This document shows, one piece after another, positions 5,375 through 36,476 of a DNA stretch of 64,000 bases (its first letter is position 1; each line of letters begins with the position of its first letter). The stretch is taken from IMG/VR virus record IMGVR_UViG_3300009514_000001, positions 158,006 through 222,005 of that record; one strand, written 5' to 3'. The notes under the pieces were generated by a model. It ran no database searches and was not told the DNA's origin. It was given only the letters and a program-made list of their open reading frames with translations. The translations under genes and the position numbers were made by a program.

Positions 5375-7444
5375 CTAATTACCTAGCGCCACGACTTCGC
5401 CATCCGGTCCTATGACAGTACCGTCGGGGAAGAATTCCAGTCCCTCATCGAACACGATTCCGTCGTCAAACTCGATATCGTCTTCCTCGGCCAGTTCGAT
5501 TTCAAACCCTTGGTCGTTTGTCGACAGGGAGTCCATGCTCGACGTCTCGGAGGCCGCCGCGATAGCCGCCGCCTCGGGTGAGACCGCCTGTGCCCGGTCT
5601 TCCTCGTCGACGAGGCCAAGGCCCTGAAACAGGTCTGTCGTAGGCTCCAGGGTCTGTCCAACCCAACGAGGGTCGGAAGGACTCATCGTAGGAGAGTTCA
5701 GCGGCAGGACATTCTCGACCGGCTGGTGGTTGTCGTACATCTGGCTGATTGCGAACTCCAACTCGAATGTGATCTTGCCATTCTGGTTCTCGTTCTCGTC
5801 ATAGCCAAAGCTGAACGAATTGAACTGCCCAACGTGAGTCCACTGGTCGTAGTCAATGGCCAGAGCCCCTACGAAGAGATTGGCGTTCGTGTTTCCGACG
5901 GTGTCGTAGATGTACCCGGCGTTCTTGTAGAACGTCAGCAGGCTCATCAGGTTCTGGAAGCTAGCGGAGTCTCGCTTCGACGCAAACTGAACCCCAGAGA
6001 CCGAAGGAAGCCCCCCTTCAGGAGGGACGACGCCCGCGTCGGGTGAGACCCCTGCGACGAAGGCTCCGATAGTCCCAGAGACGGACATGACAGGCTGCTC
6101 CTCCCCCCAACGCTGGAAGACGTACCCCTTGCGCGTCCTCTGGGAGAACTGCTGGATGCTCGTGTACTGGATGCTCATTGACGTAGGGTTGATGAGCAGA
6201 GTCAGAGGCGGTACTTCCAACATGGTCTGGAGCTGGGCTGCGATGTCCCCCGCCGTCAGACGGTCGGCAAACCCGGGCTCCTGGAAAGAGTTACGGTCGT
6301 TCTGTCGCTCAACCCCTAGGGAGACATAGGTCTCGGCCGAGATAGAGCTGCGACCCGCCCCACCCACATCGATGCCGATGAGCTGGCTGACGGCGGCCTC
6401 TCTGGCAGCCTTTGCCTCTGCAAAGGAGCTATGACGGGCACCTGTCGACTCCAGGATGCCGATGGTGGGGGTCTCCTCTCCGGTGGCGTTCCGGGACTGT
6501 GTCGGCCCGTCGAGGCCCATCTCCGCGTTGACCCGGTCTTCCTCCCCGTTCACCTCAGAGGCGAGGCCGAAGAACTCCGCTTCACTAGGGACTGTCCGGA
6601 GAGCGGCAAGGGTACCTCTGGCGGCTGCTCTAGCCTCGTCAACAGACGCAAAGAACCCAGCTCCTGTAAAGGTCTCCTCAGACAGCTCTCGGATACCAAA
6701 ACCAACCGTTGACTCATAGACCCCCAGAAACTGACTCCCCTCGTTTGCCTCAAAGGCTTGGAAGTTTGCTTCAGAGAAGTTGTCGAAAAAACCCGAAGCA
6801 GCCAGTTCGGTAATTTCAACAACCGAAGCCTGGCCTTCCTCGACGACAACACCCGTAGTAGAGAGGCCGAAGAACTCCGCCTCGTCGGGGAACTGTCGAA
6901 GAGCAGAAAGAGTACCCCTAACAGCTGCCCTGGCCTCGTCAACAGACGAGAGGAACCCGGCCCCCGTAAAGGTATTCCCAGACAATTCTCGGATGCCAAA
7001 CCCAATCGTGGACTCATAGACCCCTAGAAACTGACGCCCCTCGTTTGCCTCGAAGGCCTGGAAGTTTTCCTCAGAGAAGTTGTCGAAAAACCCAGAAGCA
7101 GCCAGTTCGGCAATCTCAGTAACCGAAAGCTGGCCTTCCTCGGCGGCCACTATGCCCGCCGAGGGGGTCGCCTCTGAAGACTCGTCCAGGGTGGAGTTGT
7201 TGCTCGCCTGGTCCAGGGCCGATTCGAACACCAGAGGAGGGACCAGGGAGATGGTGAAGGGGGACAGCAGCCGCAGGAAGGTCTTGGAGCCGTCGATGGG
7301 GAGGCCGGGCTGAATCTCGAACGAGCGCCCAAACTGAGGCCCGGAACGCAACGCCTCGTATACGTTGGCCGCCGGAACGGTTCCGATGCCGCGGAGCTTT
7401 TTCTGGACGTCGCCAGACCGGTCGAATTTCTTGGTCTGAGACAT
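5375..7444 (-). CDS. Baseplate/tail-tube-initiator-like protein with an internal 100-aa duplication
   Basis: Likely start is ATG 7444 (TAATG overlap with the upstream stop). The segment LLINPTSMSIQY...QRWGE resembles LHVNPASMKFSY...QHFGE of the neighbouring gene. Confidence 0.55.
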   Translation of the reverse strand: MSQTKKFDRSGDVQKKLRGIGTVPAANVYEALRSGPQFGRSFEIQPGLPIDGSKTFLRLLSPFTISLVPPLVFESALDQASNNSTLDESSEATPSAGIVAAEEGQLSVTEIAELAASGFFDNFSEENFQAFEANEGRQFLGVYESTIGFGIRELSGNTFTGAGFLSSVDEARAAVRGTLSALRQFPDEAEFFGLSTTGVVVEEGQASVVEITELAASGFFDNFSEANFQAFEANEGSQFLGVYESTVGFGIRELSEETFTGAGFFASVDEARAAARGTLAALRTVPSEAEFFGLASEVNGEEDRVNAEMGLDGPTQSRNATGEETPTIGILESTGARHSSFAEAKAAREAAVSQLIGIDVGGAGRSSISAETYVSLGVERQNDRNSFQEPGFADRLTAGDIAAQLQTMLEVPPLTLLINPTSMSIQYTSIQQFSQRTRKGYVFQRWGEEQPVMSVSGTIGAFVAGVSPDAGVVPPEGGLPSVSGVQFASKRDSASFQNLMSLLTFYKNAGYIYDTVGNTNANLFVGALAIDYDQWTHVGQFNSFSFGYDENENQNGKITFELEFAISQMYDNHQPVENVLPLNSPTMSPSDPRWVGQTLEPTTDLFQGLGLVDEEDRAQAVSPEAAAIAAASETSSMDSLSTNDQGFEIELAEEDDIEFDDGIVFDEGLEFFPDGTVIGPDGEVVALGN
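6564..7142. repeat. Intragenic direct repeat, two copies, 300-bp period
   Basis: tgtcgaaaaa occurs at 6781 and 7081. The peptide ELAASGFFDNFSE...EAEFFGL is present twice. Confidence 0.9.
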
Positions 7445-15778: not shown

Positions 15779-15840
15779 ACGGCCATCGATGATGTCTCAG
15801 TGAACGAACAGGTCCGTCTACCCCACCAGCATATCCTGTG
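15779..15840 (-). CDS. Tail tube protein, micro-exon 2 (62 nt)
   Basis: Encodes TGYAGGVDGPVRSLRHHRWP and is in frame with exons 1 and 3 after splicing. Confidence 0.85.
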
Positions 15841-19279: not shown

Positions 19280-19291
19280 TGTTCTCCCCAC

Positions 19292-19325
19292 AAAGAAAAG
19301 CCCTTCCACGAGTTCGTGGAAGGGC
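19292..19325 (-). terminator. Intrinsic terminator-like hairpin
   Basis: GCCCTTCCACG-AACT-CGTGGAAGGGC followed by TTTTCTTT on the minus strand. Confidence 0.75.
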
Positions 19326-23058: not shown

Positions 23059-26000
23059 TTACAAACTACTGCGCAGGTTAAATGTCACGAGTATGAATAG
23101 AAGGGGGAACACCGGGCTGTAGAATGCCTCGACATTCGCCGTGGTCGGGTCTTCGACATCGACCTCGGCGGTGATTCGACCGTAGGCCGAGACGATTTGA
23201 GCGGCCACGAGGTCGCTGAACGTCTTGGCCAAGCGGCCTTCGACCTGGGTCAGGATGCCCGGGATGAACTTGACTCCGATGAAGTTCTCCAGCGTGGCTC
23301 GGGAGCGCTGCTGGACCTCGTCGGCGATAAGGATGATGGTCGGGAGCTTGGTCAGGATGTTGGAGACATCCGTCGTCAGGCCCTGGAGCACCACCAGGTT
23401 CGGGTTCTTCTCGGCGAGGACGGTGACACCGGATACCGCCGCCTGCTGCTGCTCCACCGGGTCGAGCTTGCGACCGAGCTGGTCGAAGCCGACGATGAAA
23501 CGGTTGGTCCACGGGGTGGCGACGTCGAGGTTGGGGTCGACGACGGAACCCGCGAGGGCCGCGGCGAGGTAGAAGCCCTCGACCAGCTCAGTGGTGCGCT
23601 GGTTGAGTGCGTCAACAATGGTCAGCTCCACGCTGTCCGGGTAGACGAGGCGCAGACGCTGGTTGCTGAGCTGCTGAGCGATGCCACCCACCTGCTGAGG
23701 AGTGACGCTAGGAGTCAGACCAATGATGGCCGTCCTCTCCTGACGAAACCGCAGACTCGACTGGACGTCGACATGCTGTCCCAGGAGCTGGAAGAAACTG
23801 AGGCTGTCTCCCTTGAGCGGCACCAGGACATCCGGCAGAAGCCCACCAGGCAGAGGCTTGGTGAGGTCGTTGAGAGCCTCCAGGTAGGCAGTCTCGGACG
23901 CGAACGCCGAACCCTCGTCCTTGGGGACCTGCTTGATGGCGATGCCGACCGCGCCGTTGATGAGCATCAGGAACGCCGCCAGGCTGACCGGGTTGTCCGA
24001 GCTGCGGGTACCGAAGGTCTGCTCGATGACGTTGAGCTTGGTGAAAATCTGCGTCGAGAAGTCGTCCTTCACGAAGCTGTAGGTGACGTAGTAGAGGTCA
24101 CCGACGGCGGGCTCGTTGCCGCTCTTCTTGAAGGTCTCGATGATGGCCGTGTCCGTCGGGTTGGTGCCCGCCGTGTTGGTCACGAGAAGCTCGACGCCGC
24201 CGATGGCGTTTCTCGGGATGTTGGAGTCCGCGACGAAGGTCTTGCTGACCACGATGGTGAAGGTCTCACCGTCGGGATAGCCGAACCCGCCCTCGCGCTC
24301 TAGAACGGAGAGCGTCAGGCCCGTGACCAGGTCGCGGTAGGTCTGTCCCACCACACCGTCCTGACCGGTGCCGGTGTTGAACACCGAGGTGTCCGCCGAA
24401 CCGGAGCCGTCCGCGGGGTCGGAGCTGGTGACGTAGAAGCCACTGATACCATCCTCACCCACCGCACCGTCGCCGGCCGTGTCAAGGAGGTTGGTACCGA
24501 TGGCCAGGATGTCATCGGTCGTGGGCGTGCTCCAGGCGATGCTGGAACCGGAGCCCGTGGACTGACTCTGGAGAGCCAGGTACTCCAGGCCGACATTGTC
24601 CGTCGCCACAAAGGCCAGAGCCTCGGCAGCGAAGTAGGTGGCCGCCGGGGTAGCGAAATCCAACATATAGACACTGGCGAACGTACCCGACGAGGAGTGG
24701 TGGCTCATGAGAGCCGAAGCCAGGACTCGGACGTCCACCGGGTCCCGCAGGTCGCTAGTGTCGTCCGCCAGGCTGAACTCGCCGTTGGCGTTTCCAGAAC
24801 CGATGACGACGCTGCTGAACTGGTCGTCGCGTGCACTGACGAGACGGAACCCGGCACCTTCCTGGCGAACCAGGCCGGCAGCGAGGACCGCGGCCGCAGA
24901 GGCGCCGAAGCCCTGGGCGGACATCTCGGCCGCAATCTGCTCGATGACCGTGCCCGCGATGCTGCCCGGCCCGAGAGCCGTTGCAGTACCCGCGGCCGAG
25001 GCCGTGAACACCACCGTGACGGACGTGCCGTCCATGGTGAACTTGAACACGTTGTTCACCGGCTGAGTGCCCGTACCATCGTAGAAGATGACGAGGGGCT
25101 GGCTATCCTGGGCATCCGCGAAGCCCGTACCCTGTCCGTTGACGAAGCCAACCTCTGCGAGGATGGTCGCCGGCTGGACTGTAGCCGAGAACCCGCCGAG
25201 GCCAGTCTCCTGCTGAGCAAGGCCCGTCTCGGCGCTAGCCGAAGTGCCTTGGACAGTGAGGGAGGCCTGAGCCGCCGGCTGGTAAGGAGCGAGGGAACCG
25301 CTACCCGGCACCAGACGGTTGCGCAGGATGAGGCGGTCATGGTTGAGAGCACCAGCACCGACCGTGAAACGGCGGGCAATGGGGCCATTGTAGAGCTTGG
25401 TCTGGGTTCCGCCGGTTGCGGCGGCGGTGTCGATACCCGCCAGGGTGGAGAAGTCCTCCGCTGGGGTGGCGTCAGTGATGAACTCGATGAATCCAGCGGC
25501 GTCGCCGGCACCCAGACTGGTCATCTCGAACACGATGCGAGCATCCGCGTCGGCGAAGGCCGTAACCGTCGCCTCCAGGAGGGCCGCACCGTTGATGGCC
25601 GAAAGGGCCGTGTTGATGGCCGAAACAAGAGCCGTGACGCTGTTGTAGGTACCCGGGGCGATGGTGGCTTCGTGGTTACCCGAGACGCCAGTGACGTCAC
25701 CCGTATAGTGGAGGGTGATGTCATCGTACTCACCGGCCACGACGGTCACCGGACCGGTGAACCTGGTCGCCGAGACGTAGCGAGGCTCGGCGCCCACAGC
25801 GACAGCAGCCGTGTTGATGGCGGTCACGAAGTCCGCCAGCGTGAGGCCAGCAGACGGAGTGACTGTCGCCGACACGAGGCGGTCGTCGACCGTCAGGCTG
25901 ACGGTGTTGTTGGCCGCGGTGATGTCGTAGGTCGTCGCGCCGCTGGCAGCGTCGTAGACGATCTCGTCACCGATGAGGGAGGCGAAGAATCCGGTGCCGA

Positions 26001-27999
26001 CACCGGTCGGGTTGGCAACATCGACACCCGCAGCCCCCGAGGCCAGGTCAGCCGCATCCACGAGGATGCGAGCATGGTCCGAGGACCCCACAATGGGGAA
26101 GTAGGGGTCGTTGCCGAGAATCGTGTGCAGGGCCGGAGTTGCCTCAGAGGTGTCGAAGGTGATGGTGACCACCTCCTCCACCGGACCCGTCTGAAGAGGA
26201 TTCGGGTTGCCCTCGATGCGGGAGTCGGGCAGAAGCTCAGAGCCGCTGGGAAACTGCACGGCGATACCCGCGAGGCCGGCACTCTTGGTGCCAAAATAGG
26301 CGTCGAACAGGTCCGTCCCGTCGTCGTTGCGCATCGTGTAGGTGCCGACCGTAGCGCTGCCCGGAACGGCGACCTGGAGAGTGTACTCGTCGTCGACGAT
26401 GGTGTTGTAGTAGAAGGTCGCGAAGACCGTCGCACCGACCGCGATGGGCTCGGCGAGAGTGACCTGGGAGGACGTCGAGTCGACACTCAGGACCGTCACC
26501 GGACCGCGGTCGATGGCGTCCTGGAGGGAGAACCCCCAGTAGGCCGTGACGAGGTCGGGGCGTTCCGTCGGGAGGTCGATGCGACCGTTGGTAATGTCGC
26601 CGAAGAGACTGGCTCCCAAGGGGGTCGAACGACCGTTACCCGTGGTGGGCTGGAACGGAAGCTGGAACACCCGGCGGCTGTCCACGGGGGGAGTGACGCT
26701 CGTGTCCGTCACCGGAGAGCAGACCTCCAGGTAGGCCTTGTTGTCGACGAGAGTCGCCGAGACCTGTTGGGTCCCGAAGGGGGTGAATCCCTCGGTGGAT
26801 TGCCCTTCGCTGATGAGGGAGGCCGTACCCCAGACGATGAGGTCATCCTTGAGGACGAAGTCGACCTCGTTGATGAAGTCGCTTCGGTCAGGGGTGATAC
26901 CGGCCTGGAGAATCTGGATGATGCCCCGGTGGGCCAGGTAGTCGAAGGTGTCCTGCCACGAGTTGAAGAAGTACGTGACGGAGACCAACTGACCGGCGGC
27001 GGGAGCGAAGTCGAGGGTGACGGTTCCGGCTCCGCCGTCGACGGCGGAGGGGGTCACCTGGACGTTGTCCACCAGAACCGTCACCCGAGCGGGGTCGGTC
27101 GTGGTGATGCCACCGTTGGAACCATCGACGATGGGACGCTGGAACGTCTTGAACACGCGGTTACGTGCCGTGAAGGCGTCCTGAGGGAGTCCGAAGATGC
27201 CGTTGGCGGAGCCGTCGCCGACACGGATGTCGTTGTCCGCCGTCAGGATGATGGCCGTGTCGCCCTCATTATTCAGGAACGTCCCGACACTCAGAGAACC
27301 AACAGCCTGGCCCTGGATGAGGGCGGCTGCCTGGGTTGCCGTGAAGCTGCCTGCTGGGAGGGTGATGGTCACCTCGGCGAGCTGGTCGATGGTGATCTTC
27401 AGCTCGTCCGTGACCCCCGCTGTGATGACATAGAACTCACCCGCACCGAGACCGATCTCGCCTCGGATGGCAGCCGCCTCCGCCGTGACCTGGTCAGACA
27501 GGTCGTCGGTCGTGAGGGTGTCCGTCCGGTTGAACTGGTAGGTGACCTGAACCTGGTCGCCAGATGCTGGCTCCTGAGCGAGAGTCACAACACCTCGGGC
27601 ACCGTCGACAGCCAGAACGACGATCTGGTCGCCGTTGATGAACGCCTGGACGTCCTGACGGTTGTTACTTGTGGTGCCCGTCCCGTCGCCGGTGACGATG
27701 GGGAAGTTGCGAACCTGGACACGGTTCCGAACGCCATCGGAGTCGCCCAGGACGACCTGGCCGGTCGCGGTGATTTCCACCACAGACCTTCCGGCCATAT
27801 CCTCCTTGACGACCAATTGGTCGACAGTGGACGAGGAACCCCGAACGACTTCGAGGCTACCCTGGAACAGGACCTCGTTACCCGTGCCGATGAGGACGGG
27901 AACCTTCACCGCCGACAGGGTGCCCGCAATCGGGTTCTCGAACTGCGTCCGGACGTAAACGCCAGGGAACGCGAAGTTGTTGCCGGGGAAATCAGCCAT
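23059..27999 (-). CDS. Contractile tail sheath protein with large inserted domains (1646 aa)
   Basis: N-terminal PGVYVRT...PVLIG and a C-terminal sheath domain (AAALAG...TANVEAFYSPVFPLLFILVTF). Confidence 0.9.
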   Translation of the reverse strand: MADFPGNNFAFPGVYVRTQFENPIAGTLSAVKVPVLIGTGNEVLFQGSLEVVRGSSSTVDQLVVKEDMAGRSVVEITATGQVVLGDSDGVRNRVQVRNFPIVTGDGTGTTSNNRQDVQAFINGDQIVVLAVDGARGVVTLAQEPASGDQVQVTYQFNRTDTLTTDDLSDQVTAEAAAIRGEIGLGAGEFYVITAGVTDELKITIDQLAEVTITLPAGSFTATQAAALIQGQAVGSLSVGTFLNNEGDTAIILTADNDIRVGDGSANGIFGLPQDAFTARNRVFKTFQRPIVDGSNGGITTTDPARVTVLVDNVQVTPSAVDGGAGTVTLDFAPAAGQLVSVTYFFNSWQDTFDYLAHRGIIQILQAGITPDRSDFINEVDFVLKDDLIVWGTASLISEGQSTEGFTPFGTQQVSATLVDNKAYLEVCSPVTDTSVTPPVDSRRVFQLPFQPTTGNGRSTPLGASLFGDITNGRIDLPTERPDLVTAYWGFSLQDAIDRGPVTVLSVDSTSSQVTLAEPIAVGATVFATFYYNTIVDDEYTLQVAVPGSATVGTYTMRNDDGTDLFDAYFGTKSAGLAGIAVQFPSGSELLPDSRIEGNPNPLQTGPVEEVVTITFDTSEATPALHTILGNDPYFPIVGSSDHARILVDAADLASGAAGVDVANPTGVGTGFFASLIGDEIVYDAASGATTYDITAANNTVSLTVDDRLVSATVTPSAGLTLADFVTAINTAAVAVGAEPRYVSATRFTGPVTVVAGEYDDITLHYTGDVTGVSGNHEATIAPGTYNSVTALVSAINTALSAINGAALLEATVTAFADADARIVFEMTSLGAGDAAGFIEFITDATPAEDFSTLAGIDTAAATGGTQTKLYNGPIARRFTVGAGALNHDRLILRNRLVPGSGSLAPYQPAAQASLTVQGTSASAETGLAQQETGLGGFSATVQPATILAEVGFVNGQGTGFADAQDSQPLVIFYDGTGTQPVNNVFKFTMDGTSVTVVFTASAAGTATALGPGSIAGTVIEQIAAEMSAQGFGASAAAVLAAGLVRQEGAGFRLVSARDDQFSSVVIGSGNANGEFSLADDTSDLRDPVDVRVLASALMSHHSSSGTFASVYMLDFATPAATYFAAEALAFVATDNVGLEYLALQSQSTGSGSSIAWSTPTTDDILAIGTNLLDTAGDGAVGEDGISGFYVTSSDPADGSGSADTSVFNTGTGQDGVVGQTYRDLVTGLTLSVLEREGGFGYPDGETFTIVVSKTFVADSNIPRNAIGGVELLVTNTAGTNPTDTAIIETFKKSGNEPAVGDLYYVTYSFVKDDFSTQIFTKLNVIEQTFGTRSSDNPVSLAAFLMLINGAVGIAIKQVPKDEGSAFASETAYLEALNDLTKPLPGGLLPDVLVPLKGDSLSFFQLLGQHVDVQSSLRFRQERTAIIGLTPSVTPQQVGGIAQQLSNQRLRLVYPDSVELTIVDALNQRTTELVEGFYLAAALAGSVVDPNLDVATPWTNRFIVGFDQLGRKLDPVEQQQAAVSGVTVLAEKNPNLVVLQGLTTDVSNILTKLPTIILIADEVQQRSRATLENFIGVKFIPGILTQVEGRLAKTFSDLVAAQIVSAYGRITAEVDVEDPTTANVEAFYSPVFPLLFILVTFNLRSSL

Positions 28000-28717: not shown

Positions 28718-29998
28718 TCAACGGATGGTCTCGAAATTCCTGTTGGCATTGATGAAGAACGGGTCCTCGAAGGCGGATAGGCCGAGCTTGGCCAGAAGGT
28801 GTAAGTTGTTCTTCGCCAGGGCGATGGTATCCGGGTCCAGGGACCGCAGAGCCACCGCAGTGAGCTGGTCAGAAGAGCCCAGGGAGAACCGGCGGAACAC
28901 ACCCACCAGGGGCTCGTGAATCTTCCAGTCCGTCTGCACTCGAAGGTTGACTGTGGCGCCGTAGAAGAAGTCCTCGGCGTTCTGGTCGTAGATTTCCTCG
29001 GTCTCGCCGCCCCAGGAGACCTCTTCGATTTCAATTCCCTCGGTCGAGAGGCGGCCTCGAAGAACGCCCTCATACCAGATGAACATCAGGTCCAACATCT
29101 CCCTCTGGTCGTCGATGTCCCGAGCCCACAGATCGACATCCACATTAATGTCGACCCGGCCACCGTACTCCATCACGCCGAACTCACGGATGTCCGTGAC
29201 GACGACGGCCAGCTGGTCGCCTGGAGTGATACGACGCCCGAAGGCAAGGACGGCCCCGGGAATGGCCTGGAAGTGGGCCAGGTCAGTGGCGATGTCGAAG
29301 GGCCCGGTCTTGACCCCTTCATAACGGTAGTCAGCCGAGAGGGTCAGGCCTTGGGGCAGCGGCTCCGTGAGTGTGATCTCCCCCGTCTCCGAGTCGGCGG
29401 TGAAGTTGACTCCCTCAATGAGCTTCCAGTTCGAGGGCAGCTCGTACAGAGTCAGGGTGTCCGGGATGTACCCGCCCTGCTCCAGGAACCCCACCGTGGG
29501 GCTCACCATCTCCACACCCTCGTTGATGACAGATAGCTTGGGGCTGACAACAAACCGGTGGAACCCTGTCAACACCTGGTCTGCGGTGGGGAATTGGCCC
29601 GCTGGAAGGAACTCTCGGAACCCACCAACGGATTCAACCTCACTCTCGGTTATGTCGATGATGTAGATGCCAGGAGGACTAGGGAAGATGCCGTCATTGA
29701 GTTGGATAGCGAGGGAGTTCTCCCGAACAAACTCGATGGACAGACCAGGCTTGGTCGCGTCCGTCTTGGCCCGGACGACGTAGCTCGTCTTGTGTCCCTG
29801 GAAGTTGTCCCAGGTCAGGCGACGATGCGAGCCACTGCTTGTGCGGATGACAATACCCCTCTGCGGACGCTGCTCGAACGAGTACTTACCCTGGATGTTT
29901 TCCACCAGGTCGTCTCTGAACCGAGGGTGGTAGCTCCACAGGAGCCTCGTCTCCTCGATGAGCCTGTCGTTGAGGGCCCCGCTGCCGTAGAAGAACAT
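28718..29998 (-). CDS. Putative tail completion/terminator protein (426 aa)
   Basis: Upstream of the sheath. C-terminal INVDVDLWARD...VNLRVQTDW pattern. Function inferred. Confidence 0.5.
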   Translation of the reverse strand: MFFYGSGALNDRLIEETRLLWSYHPRFRDDLVENIQGKYSFEQRPQRGIVIRTSSGSHRRLTWDNFQGHKTSYVVRAKTDATKPGLSIEFVRENSLAIQLNDGIFPSPPGIYIIDITESEVESVGGFREFLPAGQFPTADQVLTGFHRFVVSPKLSVINEGVEMVSPTVGFLEQGGYIPDTLTLYELPSNWKLIEGVNFTADSETGEITLTEPLPQGLTLSADYRYEGVKTGPFDIATDLAHFQAIPGAVLAFGRRITPGDQLAVVVTDIREFGVMEYGGRVDINVDVDLWARDIDDQREMLDLMFIWYEGVLRGRLSTEGIEIEEVSWGGETEEIYDQNAEDFFYGATVNLRVQTDWKIHEPLVGVFRRFSLGSSDQLTAVALRSLDPDTIALAKNNLHLLAKLGLSAFEDPFFINANRNFETIR

Positions 29999-30036: not shown

Positions 30037-30435
30037 CTAAAGCACCTCCAATACCTCAAGAAGACCTTCGTTCCCCGTCTCTCGTCGGAGATCAACGAGC
30101 AACAGACCGTCAGTGGCCTCGTTCCAAGCACGCAACTGCTGGTGAGCCTTCGCAAGAAGGTCGAGGTCGACCTCTCGGGTGTACTCCAAAAAACAGGTCC
30201 CACGAGCCCACTGGTAGGGAACCCAACCAACGTGGACGTACGGAGGAAAAGGTGCCTCCCTGGAGCCAAGGACCTCCAGATTCAAAGCTTCCTCCCCGTC
30301 GACCGTTCGGTAATCCTCGACGGACAGGAAAAGGTCGGCCGAACTAGCCTGTCGACACTTCGCAATCAGGCCCACGACCGACTTCCGGCCCGACTTCCGG
30401 CCGAGAAGGGACAACACCTTTTGTTTCAGAGACAC
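30037..30435 (-). CDS. Hypothetical protein
   Basis: 132-aa ORF starting immediately after the actin-like gene. Confidence 0.55.
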   Translation of the reverse strand: MSLKQKVLSLLGRKSGRKSVVGLIAKCRQASSADLFLSVEDYRTVDGEEALNLEVLGSREAPFPPYVHVGWVPYQWARGTCFLEYTREVDLDLLAKAHQQLRAWNEATDGLLLVDLRRETGNEGLLEVLEVL

Positions 30436-30437
30436 GC

Positions 30438-32555
30438 TTAGTCGACCTCCTCGTACTCCTCCATGGCCTGGATGAGGAGGCCGCGGGCAACCGCGTTGAG
30501 GGGGTTCTCCGCCTGACGGATTTCGCTGATCTTGATGGGGAACCGGCGGCGGTGCTTCTTGAAGACCTTCTGGAAGAGATCCATGAACCCACCAGCCTTC
30601 GAGGTCCCTCCGCTGACGATGATGGGGATGGGGTTCGTCAGCTCAATCTGACAGTTCGCCACGAACTGCTCCGCCACCTTCTTGAGGGCGTAGGAGATAA
30701 GTTCCTCGTAGTAGAAGGACAGCGCCTCCCGGTCCCGGAACTTGGACTCCTCGCCTTCACTCGGGTCGAGGAGGTTGATCCCGGCCTCCTTGATGCGACA
30801 GATGCGAGAACGCGTCGAGTTACGGCTCTTGGCCGCCCCCGCGTCAATCCAGTCGCCACAGTTGTGGACAACCATACCCGGAGAGGAGAAGGAGTGATGT
30901 TTAGAGGCTACTCGGACATCGTAGACCCTGCCGTCGTAGGGAACTTGGTCAACCCTCTTAACGACGAAACAGGCGAAGTCCGGCTTCTGTGGGTGGAGGT
31001 TGACACCTTCGTGTGCAAGGAGAGTGTCCAGAAGGGTCTTGGATAGGTGACCGACAATACGAACGTCGTAACAAGGCTTACGACCCTCGATTCGCACCCC
31101 CTTTGAGTTGATTCCGCCCTGTCTGGGCGGTCTCTTGAGGACACTATGGCGAATTCCGAACCTGTTGAGTAGGTGATGCACCAACAACACCACATGTAGA
31201 GAGGTGTTGTGGATGGTGTGGCGCTTCTCCTCTTCCGTCGAGTCGCTATCCAGAAGACCCTCCAAAACCCCAAGTGCCATGCTGTCGGGGATATTACGCA
31301 CACTCAGAGGAAACGTCTTCTCCCCCTTCTCGTCGTAAAACCGGGCCTTCAGGTGCCGGGCGACAGGTGTGAGGTGGAGCTTTACCCTCGTAAGGTTCTC
31401 CTTCGGGTCATCAACGACCTCTACCTCACGATGAAACAGGACGGAGCACACCTGGGCATACTTGCGAACCAGGTGTTGGTCCCTGCGGTTGATTGCAAAC
31501 TGGACGAACCGCGAGTCCTCTGTCCGGGGTCCGCAAGAGCCGTCCCCCAGAAACATACCCAGGAATTTGCCTAGGTTCCTGGCAGTGGCAACGGTAATAT
31601 TCCGGCCCCCAAGGCGACCGAAGTAGTAAGGCCCAGAACACTTCTTCTCAGTCTGGATAGTCGGAACCCCGACAACGTCCCCCTCCCGAAGAGAGCCTGC
31701 GGCTACCCATTGCCAGCCGAACCGATCCCTCACGAAAACCCGGTGATCTCGGGTCATCTTGTGAGAGAACGCGGGAAGGTGCTCCAGGAACACCTCCACC
31801 AAAGAGTCCCGAGAACCGTTGTCCATCCTCTCTAGGACTTCGACAAACCTCCCCTGGGCGTCGAGAACGTAATCCCCCTCGCGTACCTCGGCCATCGGCA
31901 CAACGCCGCGACGGGTAATAACAGGAAAATCCCCCGCCAAACATCTGGAAATCGAAAATTCCAGGACCGGTCGGGTCTTGAAGCTCAGAGCGACATTCGT
32001 CATCCCCGATCCGAACGACATCGAGATACCAGTGTAGTCGTCCTTGAGGCCCTCGGAGAAGACGATGGCCATGGCCTCGTTCGAGTCCCAGGCCTCGTAG
32101 CCGCACTCGGTGATGATGCGCTCGAAGGCCTTCTTGTGGTAGATCACGTCCCTATCTGCGTCGATGGGGGCGGCGGGGACGCTGTAGTAGCAAATCTCCC
32201 CTTCCTCCTGAGGCTCGCCCAGGACGCTCCTCACCAGGATGCCGAGGATTTCGAGAGAGTCCACCTCGCTGGCCGACACAAGACCCTGGGCGAGAGGACG
32301 CCGGGCCTCCTCCCTCATGATGCCGGCAAGCTCCATGGCGTCATCGCCGACGACGATGAGGTCCTGGTCGCGCTCGACGAACGTGATCTTGCTCCGGCGG
32401 AGCATCTTCCGGTCGTCCTTGTCCAACGTGATGAACGCGTCGCGGACACGACGGTAGCTCACCTTGTCCGCCGTCTGCCTGGCCGCGACAAGATTCATGG
32501 TTCCGATGTCGAGGCCTATGCCTTTAACCACTTGAACTTGTTTATCTTTTCCCAT
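30438..32555 (-). CDS. Actin-fold (MreB/ParM/FtsA-like) ATPase containing a cis intein; about 344 aa after splicing
   Basis: Phosphate-1 GLDIGT, phosphate-2 SFGSGMTNV, adenosine motif IIVSGGTS, and C-terminal NAVARG. Confidence 0.8.
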   Translation of the reverse strand: MGKDKQVQVVKGIGLDIGTMNLVAARQTADKVSYRRVRDAFITLDKDDRKMLRRSKITFVERDQDLIVVGDDAMELAGIMREEARRPLAQGLVSASEVDSLEILGILVRSVLGEPQEEGEICYYSVPAAPIDADRDVIYHKKAFERIITECGYEAWDSNEAMAIVFSEGLKDDYTGISMSFGSGMTNVALSFKTRPVLEFSISRCLAGDFPVITRRGVVPMAEVREGDYVLDAQGRFVEVLERMDNGSRDSLVEVFLEHLPAFSHKMTRDHRVFVRDRFGWQWVAAGSLREGDVVGVPTIQTEKKCSGPYYFGRLGGRNITVATARNLGKFLGMFLGDGSCGPRTEDSRFVQFAINRRDQHLVRKYAQVCSVLFHREVEVVDDPKENLTRVKLHLTPVARHLKARFYDEKGEKTFPLSVRNIPDSMALGVLEGLLDSDSTEEEKRHTIHNTSLHVVLLVHHLLNRFGIRHSVLKRPPRQGGINSKGVRIEGRKPCYDVRIVGHLSKTLLDTLLAHEGVNLHPQKPDFACFVVKRVDQVPYDGRVYDVRVASKHHSFSSPGMVVHNCGDWIDAGAAKSRNSTRSRICRIKEAGINLLDPSEGEESKFRDREALSFYYEELISYALKKVAEQFVANCQIELTNPIPIIVSGGTSKAGGFMDLFQKVFKKHRRRFPIKISEIRQAENPLNAVARGLLIQAMEEYEEVD
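30861..31943 (-). mobile_element. Intein with LAGLIDADG endonuclease (361 aa)
   Basis: Starts CLAGDFPV; block B MTRDHRVF; endonuclease motifs LGMFLGDG and LEGLLDSD; block F VYDVRV; ends VVHN followed by Cys+1. Confidence 0.92.
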
Positions 32556-33316
32556 GACTCAACTCCTCAACCGAAGTAATAACGAGGTCCCGGCAGAAGT
32601 CTCGGCGGTCTCTCAAGTCACTCTCCCACAGCCTCAAAACGCCGTAACCTCGATTCCTCAGAAAAGAGTCACATGAGGCATCCAGGCGTCGTCGAATGCG
32701 TTGTCTCTCAGACAATTTGTCTGGGCTATACAAAGATGGATTGGCATGCCAAAAGTCGCCGTCCACTGTGTAATACCCGAGAGGGTGTTGCGCCTCGAGC
32801 TTCTGGTTCAATTCCTCCGAAAAAAAAAACTTGGCCATTCTTGCAGGCGAAGCCTCTCTCAACTTCTGCCGGTACTCCCTGGCCTTGTCAGGGCCGTACA
32901 CCTCTTCGTATGTTTTCCCTTTCTTCTCCTGGGTGTGCTTACGGATACCCCGAGTGATCCTACTCACATAGGAGGGGTCTTCATAGAGATGCCGCACCCG
33001 AGGGACAGGGTTTGCTTCCCCTCGTTGGGATTCTCCAAAGCCGGGATTGTCCTGGTGCCTTCGTCGGAGAGGGTTCTGATCCCCTTCGAGCCAGGGCCTC
33101 TCCTTGACGCCGAAATTGGGGTTGAGAATACCTTTTGGCCTTGGCCTTCTCAGAGTGTCCACGCTCAACCCAGGTCTTCGTCCTCAACCCATGCCTACGC
33201 AACTCCCTAGACAGAACCCCGTCACCACATCGTAGTCTTTTCCTTAGCCCCTTCATAGTGATGTCAGGATTCTCGGAGAAAATCTCCTCCAATTCCTCTT
33301 TGGGTATTTGTCTCAC
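32542..33316 (-). pseudogene. Fragmented Vsr/DUF559-like free-standing endonuclease
   Basis: Two overlapping ORFs in different frames. The C-terminus has VDGDFWH...D.FL..RGY.VLRLWE, with a shortened region near an A-run at about 32820. Confidence 0.6.
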
Positions 33317-33328
33317 CGCAACCTCTCT

Positions 33329-34042
33329 CTAGGAATTGCGTCTGAACTTCCGTAGGCCAGCAGCAGCGCTGCTCGCATCCTCGTCCTTGGCCTCCGTTGA
33401 CTGCACCGAGACCTCCTTGTCCTTGTCCACAAGGCCCGAAGGAATGAACATCGGCTCGGACTCCTCCTCTATCGGAATCGACACCCTACCACCCGAGGAG
33501 GATGTCTCCGGAGTCTGTTGTACAGACACGACCTGTACATGACCTCCGCCCATCTGGCGCATCGTAGCAGCCACCGCAGCTCCTACCGTGGCTGCCAGTG
33601 TCTCTGCATCTGGGCGAGACATGAGGGCAGTCTGGATGGTTTGGAGGGTGAGTTCCATGGTCTCGCACAATTGTCGAAGACCTAGGACCTCCTCTTTCAG
33701 GGCCTTCACCTCTCGCTGGACGTCAGCAGACGGAGGTGGCGGAGTTGGAGCCGGCGTGGGTCTCTGCTGGCGTGGGCGAGCAGGCCTCTGGGGTTGTCTC
33801 GGAGGTCTTGACGGCGTCGGTATTGGGTATCTGGACATGGGTGTTCTCTCGATGTAGGTCACCTCGACAGCTCTGAGAAGACGGTACCTCTTGAGGTCAC
33901 GAGACCCCCGGGCCAGCTTCTCAGGTACCTGGGCGACCTCTCCCTTCCGTAGCTCCACACCCAGGTCTGCTAGGTTGAGGTGACCACACAGGCAGAGGAT
34001 ACGGGCGTATCTAGGAACTGGGGAAGGAATCGAGGGCACCAT
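33329..34042 (-). CDS. Hypothetical protein with a Pro-rich linker and coiled coil
   Basis: ORF on the coding strand; start uncertain. Confidence 0.55.
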   Translation of the reverse strand: MVPSIPSPVPRYARILCLCGHLNLADLGVELRKGEVAQVPEKLARGSRDLKRYRLLRAVEVTYIERTPMSRYPIPTPSRPPRQPQRPARPRQQRPTPAPTPPPPSADVQREVKALKEEVLGLRQLCETMELTLQTIQTALMSRPDAETLAATVGAAVAATMRQMGGGHVQVVSVQQTPETSSSGGRVSIPIEEESEPMFIPSGLVDKDKEVSVQSTEAKDEDASSAAAGLRKFRRNS

Positions 34043-34844
34043 CGTCGTCCTCGTCGGGCTCCTGACACTCAGAGCACAGCATGACCACCACGCCGTCCCC
34101 AAAAGGAACCACCACGTGCTGTAGCTCTAACGACTCCTTTCCGCAGCTATCACACAGAGGGTCTCCAGCCTCCCACACCCCACGAGCGGCCTTGTCCTTG
34201 GCCCCCAACTCGCGACTGACATGGACTTCTCGGGTCGTGCCCCCCTCTACGTCATCATAGACCAGATAGGGGTCTCCCCCATCCTCGGGCTCGACGAGAC
34301 GAGCCGTCCTGGTCTTCAGCTTCGGTTGGTTGGTCGAGGTCACCTTGCGGGTGTCGGGGAGTCCGCCGGTGATGTAGATCATCTCCCCGGAGTAGTGCGA
34401 GAACTTGCCCTGCTCCAGCAGGTCATCCACAGCGAGGACAGCGTCCAGGTGGATGTCGTCCTCCTCCTTGCCGAGGACCCCGGCGAGGGCAGGGAGCATC
34501 TCCTCGACGGTCATCGGACCTCGGGAGCCGAAGAAGCTGTAGACGATGCTGTCCCAACGCTCCGTCTCCTTCGCCTCCTCGAAGAGGACGTCGGCCACCT
34601 CGTGGTTGACCTTGAAAGGGTTCTTGGCTTGCTCTGCAAGGACCTCTGGCGACTTCTCCGACGCGACCAGGGCCGGCGAGAGATAGGCCTTGGCCAGATC
34701 CCGGAACCCAGGCTTGCGGCAGTAGGAGACGATAAGCTCGATGAGTTCCTTGTTGTCGTCCCGGAACGCTTGTCCCACGAGTTGCAGAGAGAACTCGGGG
34801 TCGTCCTTGCACTGTTCGACCAGTGTTTCTAGGCTGTCACTCAC
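34011..34844 (-). CDS. Hypothetical acidic protein with a C-terminal CxxC...CxxC
   Basis: GGAGG SD before GTG 34844; strong GC3 bias. Confidence 0.6.
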   Translation of the reverse strand: MSDSLETLVEQCKDDPEFSLQLVGQAFRDDNKELIELIVSYCRKPGFRDLAKAYLSPALVASEKSPEVLAEQAKNPFKVNHEVADVLFEEAKETERWDSIVYSFFGSRGPMTVEEMLPALAGVLGKEEDDIHLDAVLAVDDLLEQGKFSHYSGEMIYITGGLPDTRKVTSTNQPKLKTRTARLVEPEDGGDPYLVYDDVEGGTTREVHVSRELGAKDKAARGVWEAGDPLCDSCGKESLELQHVVVPFGDGVVVMLCSECQEPDEDDDGALDSFPSS

Positions 34845-34976: not shown

Positions 34977-36476
34977 TTAATAATTATGGTTTTCCCAAGT
35001 TTGCGACCGCCCTCTATGTTCCCGGCTGTCCCCGATATTGCCCTTCTGAGTACCTGTCGGCATCGCCTGAGGGTCTGGGCTGTCTGGGTACACCTGGGGT
35101 CCGTGCTCGCAAGGCTCCAGAGAGTGCATGGGGCCGTACTCCGCAAGCGGGTAGACCGTGAGGCGCTCCTCTGGATCGATGGTGAGGCGGGTCTCTGGCC
35201 AGGGAAGGCCGTTGAGCCCGTTGAGGGGCACCTGGTAGCGCACATCTGGTTCATCTAGGCGTCGAATCGAGAAGTGCTGCTGGAGGAGCATCCCCCGGGC
35301 AGTCGGCTTGCGTACTGGCCCGATACTGTACCGCTCGTTGGTCTGCTTGACCACAAAATCCCGCTGGGTCATGAGCGGAGTAGGTCCGAACCAGACCTCG
35401 TACTCGTGTTCGACCGCCCGTCCCCTCTCAGTCTGGGAGACTTTGCGCTCGGCGTCGTCGGGTACCAGGATTGCCTCGTAGGGTCCTTCGTAGCCCCCGA
35501 TGAACCCGGTCCCAATACAGATCAGGCAGTTGTTCTTCGGCTGTTGGTTGTAGGCCCGTCGCCTGCGGTCCAAACGGCAGTCGCAGACCTGCCCAGAGGT
35601 CTTGCGAATGAAGAGGTTCACCCTCTCGCCGCCCTGCTCCAGAATCCAGTTGTTGCGGCGCACGGACTCCCGCCAAATCCAATCGAGGGACTCGACCTTG
35701 TAGGGGGTCAGAGGCTGGCAGTAGCGCAGTGGCGTCTCGATGAGGTTACCGGGGGCGTCTGCGTGAACAGCCACGGTGGTGATGCGGTAGAAGATTTTGC
35801 GATCCAGCTCGAAGCTGACCACATTGCGCACCGTGTTGTAGGTGATCTCGACCACGGACTCCGGTCCTATCGGCAGGACAGCCGGGTCGAACTTCTCGGT
35901 GACGTGGTTGTACGTCCCCCGAGGGACCAGCTCTACCTCTCCGGCCTGACCGAACACGAAGTGCACCGCAGCGGGAACTCCGTCGACAGTCACTGTCACG
36001 TCCGTGGGCGAGTTCGCCGGGATACAGGACCGGGCCGAACGCTTGTACGCCCCAAACCGAGTCCGGAACATCCAGCGACGGTTGTTCGGTGCGTCTCCCT
36101 TGAAGATCCAGGCGGTGTCCCAATCCACCAACTCCCTCGTCACCGGGATGATGTCGGTGAAGTCTCGGTAGAAGGTCCCGCCCAGGGGAAGGGGGTTCAG
36201 TCGGTGGTAGGGCCCTCGCTCGCCAACGTCGGAGCGATAGATGTTGACCCCCAGGACTTGCCAGGGGGTGTTCGCTGAGAGCAGAGCGGGACAGTCCCAG
36301 CGCACATCGAGGACTCCACTGACTCCGGCCCCCAGGACCTCTCCGTTGAACGGAGGGACCGGGAAGTCGCGGGCGGGGAAGTTCTCAAGAGACCAGCCTG
36401 TGTTGACCGCTCCGACAGGAACACCACCAGCACCGTACGGCCCTGCGCCGTATTGGTTGTTGCCAAACTGGCTCAT
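34977..36476 (-). CDS. Putative head-closure/neck protein (499 aa)
   Basis: GGERVNLFIRK...CDC...CLICIGTGFIGGY zinc-finger pattern, in a morphogenesis context. Confidence 0.55.
   Translation of the reverse strand: MSQFGNNQYGAGPYGAGGVPVGAVNTGWSLENFPARDFPVPPFNGEVLGAGVSGVLDVRWDCPALLSANTPWQVLGVNIYRSDVGERGPYHRLNPLPLGGTFYRDFTDIIPVTRELVDWDTAWIFKGDAPNNRRWMFRTRFGAYKRSARSCIPANSPTDVTVTVDGVPAAVHFVFGQAGEVELVPRGTYNHVTEKFDPAVLPIGPESVVEITYNTVRNVVSFELDRKIFYRITTVAVHADAPGNLIETPLRYCQPLTPYKVESLDWIWRESVRRNNWILEQGGERVNLFIRKTSGQVCDCRLDRRRRAYNQQPKNNCLICIGTGFIGGYEGPYEAILVPDDAERKVSQTERGRAVEHEYEVWFGPTPLMTQRDFVVKQTNERYSIGPVRKPTARGMLLQQHFSIRRLDEPDVRYQVPLNGLNGLPWPETRLTIDPEERLTVYPLAEYGPMHSLEPCEHGPQVYPDSPDPQAMPTGTQKGNIGDSREHRGRSQTWENHNY

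What the first reader, a model, noticed from the sequence alone, without database searches (positions are those of the whole stretch)
30438..32555. Phage actin-fold ATPase in the morphogenesis cluster, invaded by an intein
Seen: all actin-superfamily nucleotide-binding motifs, with a 361-aa intein inserted shortly after the phosphate-2 motif (SISR|C...HN|CGDWID). Known: jumbo phages use tubulin (PhuZ) filaments, and inteins favour conserved sites of essential nucleotide-binding proteins. Inference: the actin homologue is essential and conserved in this phage group (DNA/capsid positioning or assembly). An actin-fold protein is an unusual intein host.
Basis: partly seen in the sequence, partly recalled or inferred. 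Interest (0 to 1): 0.6.

Follow-up and report, generated by a model that had tools for sequence, protein, structure and literature searches.

The report
Intein-split actin homologue in huge phage
A 222-kb tailed phage carries, next to its tail genes, a gene for an actin-like protein of the "volactin" family that is interrupted by a self-splicing, self-spreading intein; both the phage actin family (hundreds of huge-phage contigs) and the actin-hosted intein (25 protein clusters) are widespread, and I found neither described in the papers searched.

Summary
ORF 30438..32555 (-) encodes 705 aa: a 344-aa actin-fold protein (Pfam Volactin PF25216, 229 bits) interrupted by a 361-aa intein (aa 205-565) with Cys1, TxxH, two LAGLIDADG motifs, His-Asn and +1 Cys. 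An 86%-identical, intein-free relative shows a clean 1083-nt insertion, with GGT changed to TGT at the +1 codon.

The extein belongs to a well-supported clade specific to huge or jumbo phages (382 IMG/VR loci, 52-59% identity). This clade is separate from archaeal volactins (35-43%) and from a small bacterial group. A model of the intein-free relative is closest to filament-forming actins (BeeR Z 28, MreB 27, crenactin 26).

The gene lies just upstream of a tail terminator (fold Z 14.9) and a 1646-aa tail sheath. About three quarters of related loci share this order.

The same intein sits at the same site in 24 other phage protein clusters, scattered over the extein tree. Its GC3 is lower than the exteins' (0.67 against 0.83), which fits homing.

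The gene is common but not universal: five related genomes lack it, one of them complete at 536 kb. "Essential" is therefore not supported. Filament formation and any role in virion assembly are inferred, not shown.

The parts
30438..32555 (-). Whole ORF: 705-aa precursor (actin-like exteins plus intein), stop codon included
31944..32555 (-). N-extein, aa 1-204: phosphate-1 (aa 12-23), connect-1 (aa 158-168), phosphate-2 SFGSGMTN (aa 178-190). Matches Volactin profile positions 3-196.
30861..31943 (-). Intein, aa 205-565 (361 aa): Cys1 (block A), TRDH (block B, aa 268-271), LAGLIDADG motifs at aa 332-340 and 428-439, block F at aa 544-551, His564-Asn565
   Evidence: absent from L248 at DNA level; GC3 0.668 against 0.834 in the exteins
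30441..30860 (-). C-extein, aa 566-705: +1 Cys in place of the family's Gly in GGDWID, adenosine motif (aa 645-656), connect-2 (aa 684-694), acidic C-terminal tail. Matches Volactin profile positions 196-321.
28718..29998 (-). Conserved downstream neighbour, 426 aa: tail terminator (neck/tail completion) protein
   Evidence: AF2 model pLDDT 75.6. The top 35 VIA matches are all neck, terminator or cap proteins: phage 812 Z 14.9, T5 p142 12.9, lambda gpU 11.2, T4 gp15 9.2. BFVD matches phage G gp177. Atlas lead. Synteny.
23059..27999 (-). Conserved second neighbour, 1646 aa: tail sheath
   Evidence: tblastn to annotated tail sheaths of Tunturiibacter phage Tunturi_5 (E 4e-38), Bacillus phage G gp178 and Mycobacterium phage Myrna gp122; synteny
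34977..36476 (-). Conserved upstream neighbour, 499 aa, function open (faint lead to neck proteins; invariant CxC...CxxC)
   Evidence: present upstream in 57 of 67 related loci
32542..33168 (-). 208-aa ORF with a weak DUF559 (Vsr-like endonuclease) match, overlapping the start of the actin gene. It lies in an 827-nt block (33343..32517) that the closest relative lacks, so it is probably a free-standing mobile endonuclease gene.
   Evidence: (4 of 80 loci)
30037..30435 (-). 132-aa ORF filling a 406-nt block (30445..30040) that the closest relative lacks. Not conserved, so not a conserved ParR/AlpA-type adaptor.

Best explanation
The ORF encodes the precursor of an actin-like protein of the volactin family (PF25216). 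It belongs to a large clade of that family found only in huge or jumbo tailed phages.

A 361-aa class-1 intein with a LAGLIDADG homing-endonuclease domain is inserted in frame between Arg204 and the first Gly of the family's invariant R-GGDW motif. That Gly has become the +1 Cys nucleophile. The motif is the turn after the second strand that follows phosphate-2, next to the nucleotide cleft.

Shown:
- the anatomy of the ORF and the precise insertion relative to intein-free alleles;
- all canonical splicing residues and both endonuclease motifs;
- family membership and the phage-specific clade;
- the neck/tail gene context;
- recurrence of the same intein at the same site.

Inferred:
- After translation the intein splices itself out, leaving a 344-aa protein with Cys for Gly at one position.
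- During co-infection its endonuclease cuts intein-free alleles and the intein is copied in. This would explain its scattered distribution and foreign codon usage.
- The mature protein binds ATP and forms filaments, as Haloferax volactin does in vivo.
- It is made together with the neck and tail genes and helps organise late events of infection, such as assembly or positioning of the very large virion parts.
- It is an accessory gene rather than an indispensable one.
For: Identity and anatomy:
- Pfam Volactin 229.5 bits against a cut-off of 35, split at profile position 196 by Intein_splicing and LAGLIDADG_3.
- A family profile also hits the PI-SceI/VMA1 intein (E 2.5e-8), the Pho RadA intein, I-DmoI, MamK and FtsA.
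- P0002 (86% identical) and P0003 are intein-free with R|GGDWID.
- The DNA of P0002's contig (83-85% identical) lacks exactly the 1083 nt; the +1 codon is GGT there and TGT here.

Family and clade:
- 899 or more homologues of about 340 aa.
- 382 IMG/VR loci at 52-59% identity against 35-43% in cells.
- Phage clade support 97 (SH-aLRT).
- Shared motifs SFG[SA]GMTN and GGDWID.

Fold:
- The AF2 model of P0002 has pLDDT 90.3.
- Foldseek tops are Mbl, MreB and MamK.
- VIA gives BeeR Z 28.2, MreB 26.6, crenactin 25.6.

Filaments in the family: volactin-GFP forms dynamic filaments (PMC10869688).

Context: tail terminator and tail sheath downstream, with conserved order.

Intein mobility:
- 24 other clusters, all PF25216 hosts, same site, 38-64% intein identity.
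- At least 8-14 gains or losses on the extein tree.
- The intein is more similar than the exteins in some pairs, 64/56 and 43/31.
- GC3 0.668 against 0.834.

Not an intron: no Rfam intron in the gene, although the same scan finds a group I intron elsewhere in the window.
Against: - No experiment or expression data: no sequencing run was listed.
- Filament formation is extrapolated from a homologue only about 37% identical, and from fold ranks in which a non-filament Hsp70 domain (BiP, Z 24.3) is not far behind.
- The fold model is of the 86%-identical intein-free relative, not of the spliced product itself.
- Phosphate-2 lacks the usual Asp, so ATPase kinetics may be unusual.
- The second LAGLIDADG motif ends in Ser instead of the family's Gly, so endonuclease activity is uncertain.
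- Five related genomes lack the gene, so it cannot be required for building this type of virion.
- Gene position in a late module does not prove a morphogenetic role.
Confidence: 0.65

Rival explanations
1. ParM/AlpC-type system: the filament moves or positions phage DNA (replication sites, or partition of an episomal or pseudolysogenic genome) through a DNA-binding adaptor and centromere-like repeats.
For: Phage- and plasmid-borne actins with known roles do this (AlpC of prophage CGP3, PMC4446434 and PMC5539076). Volactin dynamics were likened to ParM. ParM-type structures are clear fold matches (Z 19-22.6).
Against: - There is no conserved adaptor gene. The 132-aa ORF downstream is absent from 80 related loci and from the closest relative.
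- No iterated repeat array flanks the gene.
- The conserved neighbours are tail genes, not replication genes.
- ParM families rank below BeeR, MreB and crenactin.
Confidence: 0.13
2. Host take-over: an MreB-like protein that interferes with, or replaces, the host's shape and cell-wall cytoskeleton, for example by enlarging or reshaping the cell to fit huge virions.
For: MreB and Mbl are among the top fold matches. The founding member, volactin, affects cell shape.
Against: - It is not a member of the MreB_Mbl Pfam family.
- No membrane-binding amphipathic N-terminus is evident; the N-terminus is short and basic, the C-terminus acidic.
- Placement among late tail genes is odd for a take-over function.
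- There is no direct evidence.
Confidence: 0.1
3. A non-polymerising actin-fold ATPase that acts as an assembly chaperone or reactivase for the neck, the terminator or the giant sheath.
For: Hsp70-type nucleotide-binding domains and the diol-dehydratase reactivase are also strong fold matches (BiP Z 24.3). The gene sits tightly between structural genes.
Against: - It has no substrate-binding domain; the protein is a bare 344-aa actin fold.
- The best matches are filament formers.
- The closest characterised relative polymerises in vivo.
Confidence: 0.1
4. The insert has decayed, so the gene is a dead allele: a non-splicing intein that permanently disrupts the actin fold.
For: The second LAGLIDADG motif ends in Ser rather than Gly. 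Related phages can live without the gene.
Against: The reading frame is intact over 2115 nt. All splicing residues are kept: Cys1, TxxH, block F Asp, His-Asn, +1 Cys. The exteins are 86% identical to an intein-free allele and keep every invariant family residue except the +1 position.
Confidence: 0.02

Closest known systems
Volactin (VolA, HVO_2015) of Haloferax volcanii; Pfam PF25216
   Same: Same Pfam family, well above the cut-off. It shares the family motifs SFG[SA]GMTN, R-GGDWID and PLxAVAxG, a length of about 340 aa and an acidic C-terminus. Volactin forms dynamic filaments in vivo.
   Different: Only about 35-43% identical. The window's protein lies in a separate, phage-only clade. It is encoded by a tailed phage next to tail genes, not by an archaeal chromosome. 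It is interrupted by an intein. A role in archaeal rod-to-disk shape change cannot apply.
MreB / Mbl, MamK, BeeR, crenactin (filament-forming prokaryotic actins)
   Same: Best structural matches for the whole 340-residue model: BeeR Z 28.2 (309 residues aligned, rmsd 3.4), MreB 26.6, crenactin 25.6, MamK 22.0. A family profile weakly hits the MamK sequence.
   Different: Sequence identity is only 16-20%. Pfam reported no MreB_Mbl match. Phosphate-2 has Ser instead of Asp. Filament architecture is unknown.
AlpC of Corynebacterium prophage CGP3, and ParM/Alp7A-type plasmid or phage actins
   Same: An actin-like protein encoded by a phage. This is the precedent that phages use their own actin filaments.
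   Different: AlpC works with the adaptor AlpA and alpS sites in DNA transport and replication. Here no conserved adaptor or repeat array is present, the neighbours are tail genes, and the family is a different one (PF25216).
PhuZ tubulin spindle of nucleus-forming jumbo phages (Chimalliviridae)
   Same: A cytoskeletal protein encoded by very large phages. It is non-essential in some lineages, as this gene is here. The short conserved acidic C-terminal tail recalls PhuZ (own knowledge).
   Different: Different superfamily: tubulin, not actin. This genome has no tubulin match. Nothing shows a phage nucleus here.
PI-SceI (VMA1) type class-1 inteins with a LAGLIDADG homing endonuclease
   Same: Cys1, TxxH, two LAGLIDADG motifs, His-Asn, +1 Cys. 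A profile hits the VMA1 precursor at E 2.5e-8, and also PI-SceI, I-DmoI and the Pho RadA intein. It is inserted at a conserved site close to the nucleotide pocket.
   Different: The host is an actin-fold protein. The other inteins in this genome sit in the usual hosts: UvrD-like, DnaB-like and SNF2 helicases and PolA. All detectable relatives of this intein sit in the same phage actin family.

Membership tests
Volactin family (Pfam PF25216) | Score above the curated Pfam cut-off over the full profile | tested here: met
   229.5 bits against 35. N-extein covers profile 3-196 and C-extein 196-321, each above the cut-off alone at 160.8 and 72.1 bits.
Volactin family (Pfam PF25216) | Family-specific motifs (phosphate-2 SFG[SA]GMTN; R-GGDWID; GGTS; PLxAVAxG) | tested here: met
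   All are present. The only departure is the first Gly of GGDWID, replaced by the intein's +1 Cys.
Volactin family (Pfam PF25216) | Actin fold with four subdomains | tested here: met
   Tested on the 86%-identical intein-free relative P0002, not on the spliced product: pLDDT 90.3, full-length matches to actins at Z 22-28.
Volactin family (Pfam PF25216) | Placement inside the archaeal clade that holds Haloferax-type volactin (orthology) | tested here: not met
   It falls in a separate phage clade (support 97). The archaeal clade (99) is distinct. The root is uncertain.
Volactin family (Pfam PF25216) | Dynamic ATP-dependent filaments in vivo | not testable with these tools
   Known only for H. 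volcanii. The homodimer prediction gave no verdict.
Class-1 intein with LAGLIDADG homing endonuclease | In-frame insertion that is absent from close homologues, with exteins contiguous across the site | tested here: met
   Protein alignments. DNA comparison with L248: 1083 nt against 0.
Class-1 intein with LAGLIDADG homing endonuclease | Splicing residues: Cys/Ser1, block B TxxH, block F Asp, penultimate His, terminal Asn, +1 Cys/Ser/Thr | tested here: met
   C205, T268/H271, D546, H564, N565, C566. They are conserved in 18 homologous inteins, three of which have +1 Ser.
Class-1 intein with LAGLIDADG homing endonuclease | Hint / intein-splicing domain profile match | tested here: met
   PF14890 gives 35.5 bits on the protein (cut-off 35.8) and 37.2 bits in the six-frame scan. 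The family profile hits the VMA1 and RadA inteins.
Class-1 intein with LAGLIDADG homing endonuclease | Two LAGLIDADG motifs with the acidic catalytic residues | tested here: met
   LGMFLGDGS (aa 332-340) and LGVLEGLLDSDS (aa 428-439). PF14528 gives 23.3 bits against 22.5. I-DmoI is hit by the profile. The last residue of motif 2 is Ser where relatives have Gly.
Class-1 intein with LAGLIDADG homing endonuclease | Protein splicing and homing actually occur | not testable with these tools
   Indirect only: scattered distribution and lower GC3.
MreB/Mbl (Pfam PF06723) | Profile match to MreB_Mbl | tested here: not met
   No MreB_Mbl match was listed at E up to 1. True MreBs form the outgroup, separated by a long branch.
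ParMRC / AlpACS segregation system | Adjacent conserved adaptor gene and centromere-like repeats | tested here: not met
   The downstream 132-aa ORF is not conserved. Only short two-copy repeats are found. The semi-conserved 257-aa upstream gene was not examined as a possible adaptor.
PhuZ / phage tubulin | Tubulin/FtsZ GTPase domain | tested here: not met
   No PF00091 match in the 222-kb genome.

The most novel reading that the evidence does not exclude
Volactin-like proteins are a so far undescribed actin cytoskeleton of huge tailed phages. On this reading the filament is co-expressed with neck, tail-terminator and sheath genes and organises assembly or positioning of giant virion parts, making it an actin counterpart of the PhuZ tubulin spindle. 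It would also be the first actin-fold protein family known to host a natural, actively homing intein lineage.
Probability: 0.25. Interest if true: 0.8.

Novelty: new variant of a known kind. Interest (0 to 1): 0.55.

Why it matters
The only well-studied phage cytoskeleton is the PhuZ tubulin spindle. A 2026 review of jumbo-phage biology discusses no actin homologue. Here an actin-like family appears in hundreds of huge-phage contigs, is better conserved than the tail genes beside it, and keeps a fixed place between neck and tail genes.

This gives a concrete, testable candidate for how very large virions are organised inside a cell. It also ties the recently named archaeal volactins to a large viral gene pool. 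For intein biology it adds an actin-fold host and a natural set of intein-plus and intein-minus alleles, some 86% identical, that suits homing studies.

It is not a new principle: phage actins (AlpC) and inteins in phage genes are both known.

Tried and rejected
- Homodimer prediction for the intein-free relative: 'no answer', score 0.00. This counts neither for nor against polymerisation.
- Sequencing runs for expression or intein-minus variants: none was listed.
- PHROGs: no match for the protein or for nine of ten neighbours.
- Megablast of 24 kb against GenBank phages: nothing.
- Locus search in IMG/VR with the intein alone: nothing; the patterns were too specific.
- PDB sequence searches: the extein profile gave only a weak FtsA hit. 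The terminator and 499-aa profiles gave nothing useful. The single intein gave only a marginal RadA intein hit.
- Pfam sheath and tubulin models on the genome: no match. The sheath was identified by tblastn instead.
- Intron instead of intein: rejected. There is no Rfam intron in the gene, the frame is continuous, and the intein residues are canonical.
- ParR-like adaptor or centromere: not found.
- 'Cellular' hits at 56% identity in Legionellales and Thermoplasmata MAGs: both fall inside the phage clade. The Legionellales contig also carries the phage gene order. I take both short contigs for mis-binned phage DNA.
- The two exteins were not joined into one sequence for any search or fold. They were searched separately by reference. 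The natural intein-free homologue P0002 stood in for the spliced product. In the trees the intein columns were dropped by gap trimming of full-length rows.
Full report
**1. The observation**

The minus-strand ORF at window 30438..32555 is open for 705 codons.
- N-extein: aa 1-204, window 31944..32555.
- Intein: aa 205-565, 361 aa, window 30861..31943.
- C-extein: aa 566-705, window 30441..30860. The exteins total 344 aa.

Pfam finds Volactin (PF25216) at E 9.3e-68 in two stretches that meet at profile position 196. Intein_splicing and LAGLIDADG_3 lie between them. A six-frame scan of the genome gives each extein a score above the cut-off on its own, 160.8 and 72.1 bits.

The window is the last 64 kb of a 222,005-bp IMG/VR virus record. 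Its first 30 bases recur 96 bp from its end, and the record is classed as having direct terminal repeats.

**2. The insert is an intein**

Intein-free homologues align across the site without a gap. P0002 (340 aa, 86% identical) and P0003 (344 aa) read ...R|GGDWID.

The contig that encodes P0002 (L248) is 83-85% identical in DNA over this region. The N-extein matches L248 5535..6097 and the C-extein matches 6109..6522, so the 1083-nt block has no counterpart. At the junction the relative has CGA|GGT GGG GAC TGG. The window has AGA|TGT (intein start) and AAC|TGT GGC GAC TGG (intein end). One base change turns the Gly codon into the +1 Cys.

All class-1 splicing residues are present: Cys205, Thr268 and His271 in TRDH, Asp546 in block F, His564-Asn565 and Cys566. 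Both LAGLIDADG motifs keep their acidic residues. The second motif ends in Ser where relatives have Gly, so endonuclease activity is less certain than splicing.

A profile of the family hits the yeast VMA1 (PI-SceI) intein at E 2.5e-8, and also the Pho RadA intein and I-DmoI. An Rfam scan finds no intron in the gene, though it finds a group I intron elsewhere in the window.

**3. The intein is a lineage, not a one-off**

A search with the intein part alone returned 24 other protein clusters at 38-64% intein identity. Every one is a PF25216 protein of 640-770 aa. In the alignment of 17 of them the intein sits at the identical site, with +1 Cys or, in three, Ser.

On the extein tree the intein-bearing rows are scattered. 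At least 8-10 changes of state are needed in the 85-row IQ-TREE tree and 12-14 in the 224-row FastTree tree. The window's own nearest relatives, P0002 and P0003, are intein-free (support 99).

In some pairs the inteins are more alike than the exteins: 64% against 56% for P0122, and 43% against 31% for P0143. The intein's GC3 is 0.668 against 0.834 for the exteins. Together these fit repeated homing into intein-free alleles, though loss cannot be separated from gain without a root.

The genome is rich in inteins generally. They occur in a 2411-aa UvrD-like helicase (at least two), a DnaB-like helicase, an SNF2 helicase and probably PolA. The presence of an intein therefore says little that is specific to this gene.

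**4. What the extein is**

The N-extein alone finds at least 899 homologues, nearly all 330-350 aa and all carrying PF25216.

In one genome per prokaryotic species, the cellular relatives are only 35-43% identical. They are haloarchaea (the true volactins), Thermoplasmatales, Archaeoglobaceae and a few bacteria: Desulfosarcina, Neomarinimicrobiota and a Clostridium MAG. The two hits at 56% lie on short MAG contigs. Both fall inside the phage clade, and one of them carries the phage gene order.

In IMG/VR, 382 stretches encode relatives at 52-59% identity, on contigs up to 618 kb. In GenBank phages, the homologue was found only in two uncultured huge-phage records, LR745208.1 and LR756511.1.

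The tree, with MreB as outgroup, shows three groups: a bacterial-cell group (support 96), an archaeal volactin clade (99) and a phage clade (97) that holds the window's protein. Three very divergent intein-bearing proteins (P0143-P0145) sit on long branches of uncertain place.

The whole family shares an unusual phosphate-2 motif, SFG[SA]GMTN, with Ser for the usual Asp. It also shares the R-GGDWID turn into which the intein is inserted.

**5. Fold**

The natural intein-free homologue P0002 was folded with a 24-row alignment instead (pLDDT 90.3, pTM 0.87).
- Foldseek against the PDB ranks Mbl, MreB and MamK first, then actin, crenactin and BeeR.
- The exhaustive VIA search gives BeeR filament Z 28.2, MreB 26.6, crenactin 25.6, BiP nucleotide-binding domain 24.3, actin 23.7, FtsA 23.7 and ParM types 19-22.6. 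The first sugar kinase, MurK, appears at Z 17.6.

The margin over Hsp70-type domains is modest, however.

Haloferax volactin forms dynamic filaments in vivo (PMC10869688). This is the only functional evidence in the family. A homodimer prediction gave no verdict.

**6. Context**
- The 426-aa gene downstream is a tail terminator. Its model (pLDDT 75.6) matches neck, terminator or cap proteins in all of the top 35 rows: phage 812 Z 14.9, T5 p142 12.9, lambda gpU 11.2, T4 gp15 9.2. In BFVD it matches phage G gp177, the gene next to phage G's sheath.
- The 1646-aa gene after it is a tail sheath, shown by tblastn to annotated sheaths of Tunturi_5, phage G and Myrna.
- Upstream lies a conserved 499-aa protein of unknown role.

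Among 80 IMG/VR loci chosen by the actin gene, 58 of 78 with enough flank have the terminator downstream. 55 of 77 have the sheath, and 57 of 67 have the 499-aa gene upstream. Conversely, 51 of 67 loci chosen by the terminator have the actin gene upstream on the same strand. "In the morphogenesis cluster" is therefore supported.

The gene is not universal. Five related genomes that lack it near the terminator have no PF25216 match anywhere, and one of them is a 536-kb record rated 100% complete. The genome has no tubulin. No conserved adaptor gene or repeat array of the ParMRC/AlpACS kind flanks the gene.

**7. Mobile-element hot spot**

Compared with L248, the window has three insertions in and around this one gene:
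- an 827-nt block with a DUF559-like ORF, directly upstream and overlapping the start codon;
- the intein;
- a 406-nt block with a non-conserved 132-aa ORF, directly downstream.

**8. Interpretation**

Shown: this is an intein-interrupted member of a phage-specific clade of the volactin family, sitting in a neck/tail module.

Inferred:
- the intein splices, and spreads by homing;
- the mature protein is an ATP-dependent filament former;
- it is made late and helps organise assembly of a very large virion, as an accessory gene.

Rivals are DNA positioning (ParM/AlpC-like), manipulation of host shape (MreB-like), a non-polymerising assembly ATPase, and a dead allele. The report sections list the evidence for and against each.

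**9. Novelty**

Full-text searches found the volactin papers, all on haloarchaea. They found phage actin AlpC and jumbo-phage reviews that discuss only PhuZ as a cytoskeletal element. They found no paper on a phage volactin-like protein or on a natural intein in an actin-like protein. The library lacks most subscription journals, so this is absence in the papers searched, not proof of absence.

The components are known kinds: a phage-encoded cytoskeletal protein and a LAGLIDADG intein. What is new is the family, its conserved place among tail genes, and the host protein of the intein.

Noticed in passing
window 37652-39115 (+): Thymidylate synthase (Pfam E 1.5e-108) of 487 aa instead of about 266. 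It carries an in-frame insertion of roughly 200 aa that matches HNH endonuclease PHROGs (aa 122-261). There are no intein-type boundary residues and no Rfam intron at gathering score. This may be an in-frame endonuclease domain or an unrecognised intron.
   Followed up: partly
window 15527-16912 (-): A group I intron (Rfam RF00028, 77 bits, 15527-15788) lies directly downstream of a 349-aa LAGLIDADG_2 plus HTH ORF (15863-16912). This is an intron with its homing endonuclease; the interrupted host gene was not identified.
   Followed up: partly
window 32542-33168 (-) and 45427-46713 (-): Two ORFs have DUF559 / Vsr-like endonuclease matches. The first lies in an 827-nt block inserted directly upstream of the actin gene relative to the closest relative, and occurs in only 4 of 80 related loci. 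They are probably free-standing homing endonuclease genes.
   Followed up: partly
window 44798-45469 (-): A 223-aa ORF matches the C-terminal part of the intein-splicing domain (38.9 bits) and has homologues in 5 related loci. This may be a mini-intein or a fragment next to the DUF559 ORF.
   Followed up: no
genome outside the window: G000 C1 about 69.1-76.4 kb, 83.9-88.0 kb, 89.7-92.6 kb, 93.5-96.5 kb (L169, L170): There are inteins in a 2411-aa UvrD-like helicase (at least two, one with LAGLIDADG), a DnaB-like helicase (957 aa) and an SNF2 helicase (1013 aa), and a weak signal in PolA (1367 aa). The genome is unusually intein-rich.
   Followed up: partly
window 23059-27999 (-): The tail sheath is 1646 aa, several times the usual size. 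Only the C-terminal 300-400 aa resemble the sheaths of phage G, Myrna and the other isolates hit; Tunturi_5 matches from residue 280 on (43% of the query covered). A short weak DUF2460 match lies near the N-terminus.
   Followed up: partly
window 34977-36476 (-): The conserved 499-aa neighbour has invariant CxC...CxxC cysteines (a possible zinc site). It has no detectable relatives outside these phages and only a faint structural lead to T4 neck protein.
   Followed up: partly
window 33329-34102 (-): A 257-aa ORF lies just upstream of the actin gene once the endonuclease insertion is ignored. It has a long Pro/Arg/Gln-rich stretch followed by a helical segment. It is semi-conserved, with short matches in 15 of 80 loci and a counterpart in L248, and is a candidate partner of the actin-like protein.
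   Followed up: no
window 18362-19309 (-): A 315-aa ORF matches the class II aminoacyl-tRNA synthetase core (tRNA-synt_2, E 2.6e-12). It is also present in the close relative L248. No tRNA genes lie in the window.
   Followed up: no
L089 and L092 (IMGVR_UViG_3300025141_000016, 297 kb): One viral contig carries two copies of the actin-like gene about 160 kb apart. These are either paralogues or an assembly concatemer.
   Followed up: no
L004 (Thermoplasmata MAG contig, 9 kb) and L005 (Legionellales MAG contig, 19 kb): These 'cellular' hits at 56% identity fall inside the phage clade. L005 also carries the phage gene order (499-aa gene, actin, terminator, sheath). They are probably phage contigs mis-binned into MAGs.
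   Followed up: yes
L006, L007, L009, L012: A small bacterial-cell clade of PF25216 proteins (Desulfosarcina variabilis chromosome, Neomarinimicrobiota, a Clostridium MAG) shows that the 'archaeal' volactin family also occurs in bacteria. Whether these lie in prophages was not checked.
   Followed up: no
whole record G000: CheckV completeness is given as 42%, yet IMG/VR classes the record as having direct terminal repeats; its first 30 bases recur 96 bp from its end. The estimate probably reflects much larger relatives of 300-600 kb.
   Followed up: partly
C-termini of the phage-clade proteins (window 30441-30470): A short conserved acidic tail (...QAMQEYEE) ends almost all phage-clade proteins. 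The bacterial-cell clade lacks it, and archaeal volactins have longer acidic tails. It may be an interaction motif.
   Followed up: partly
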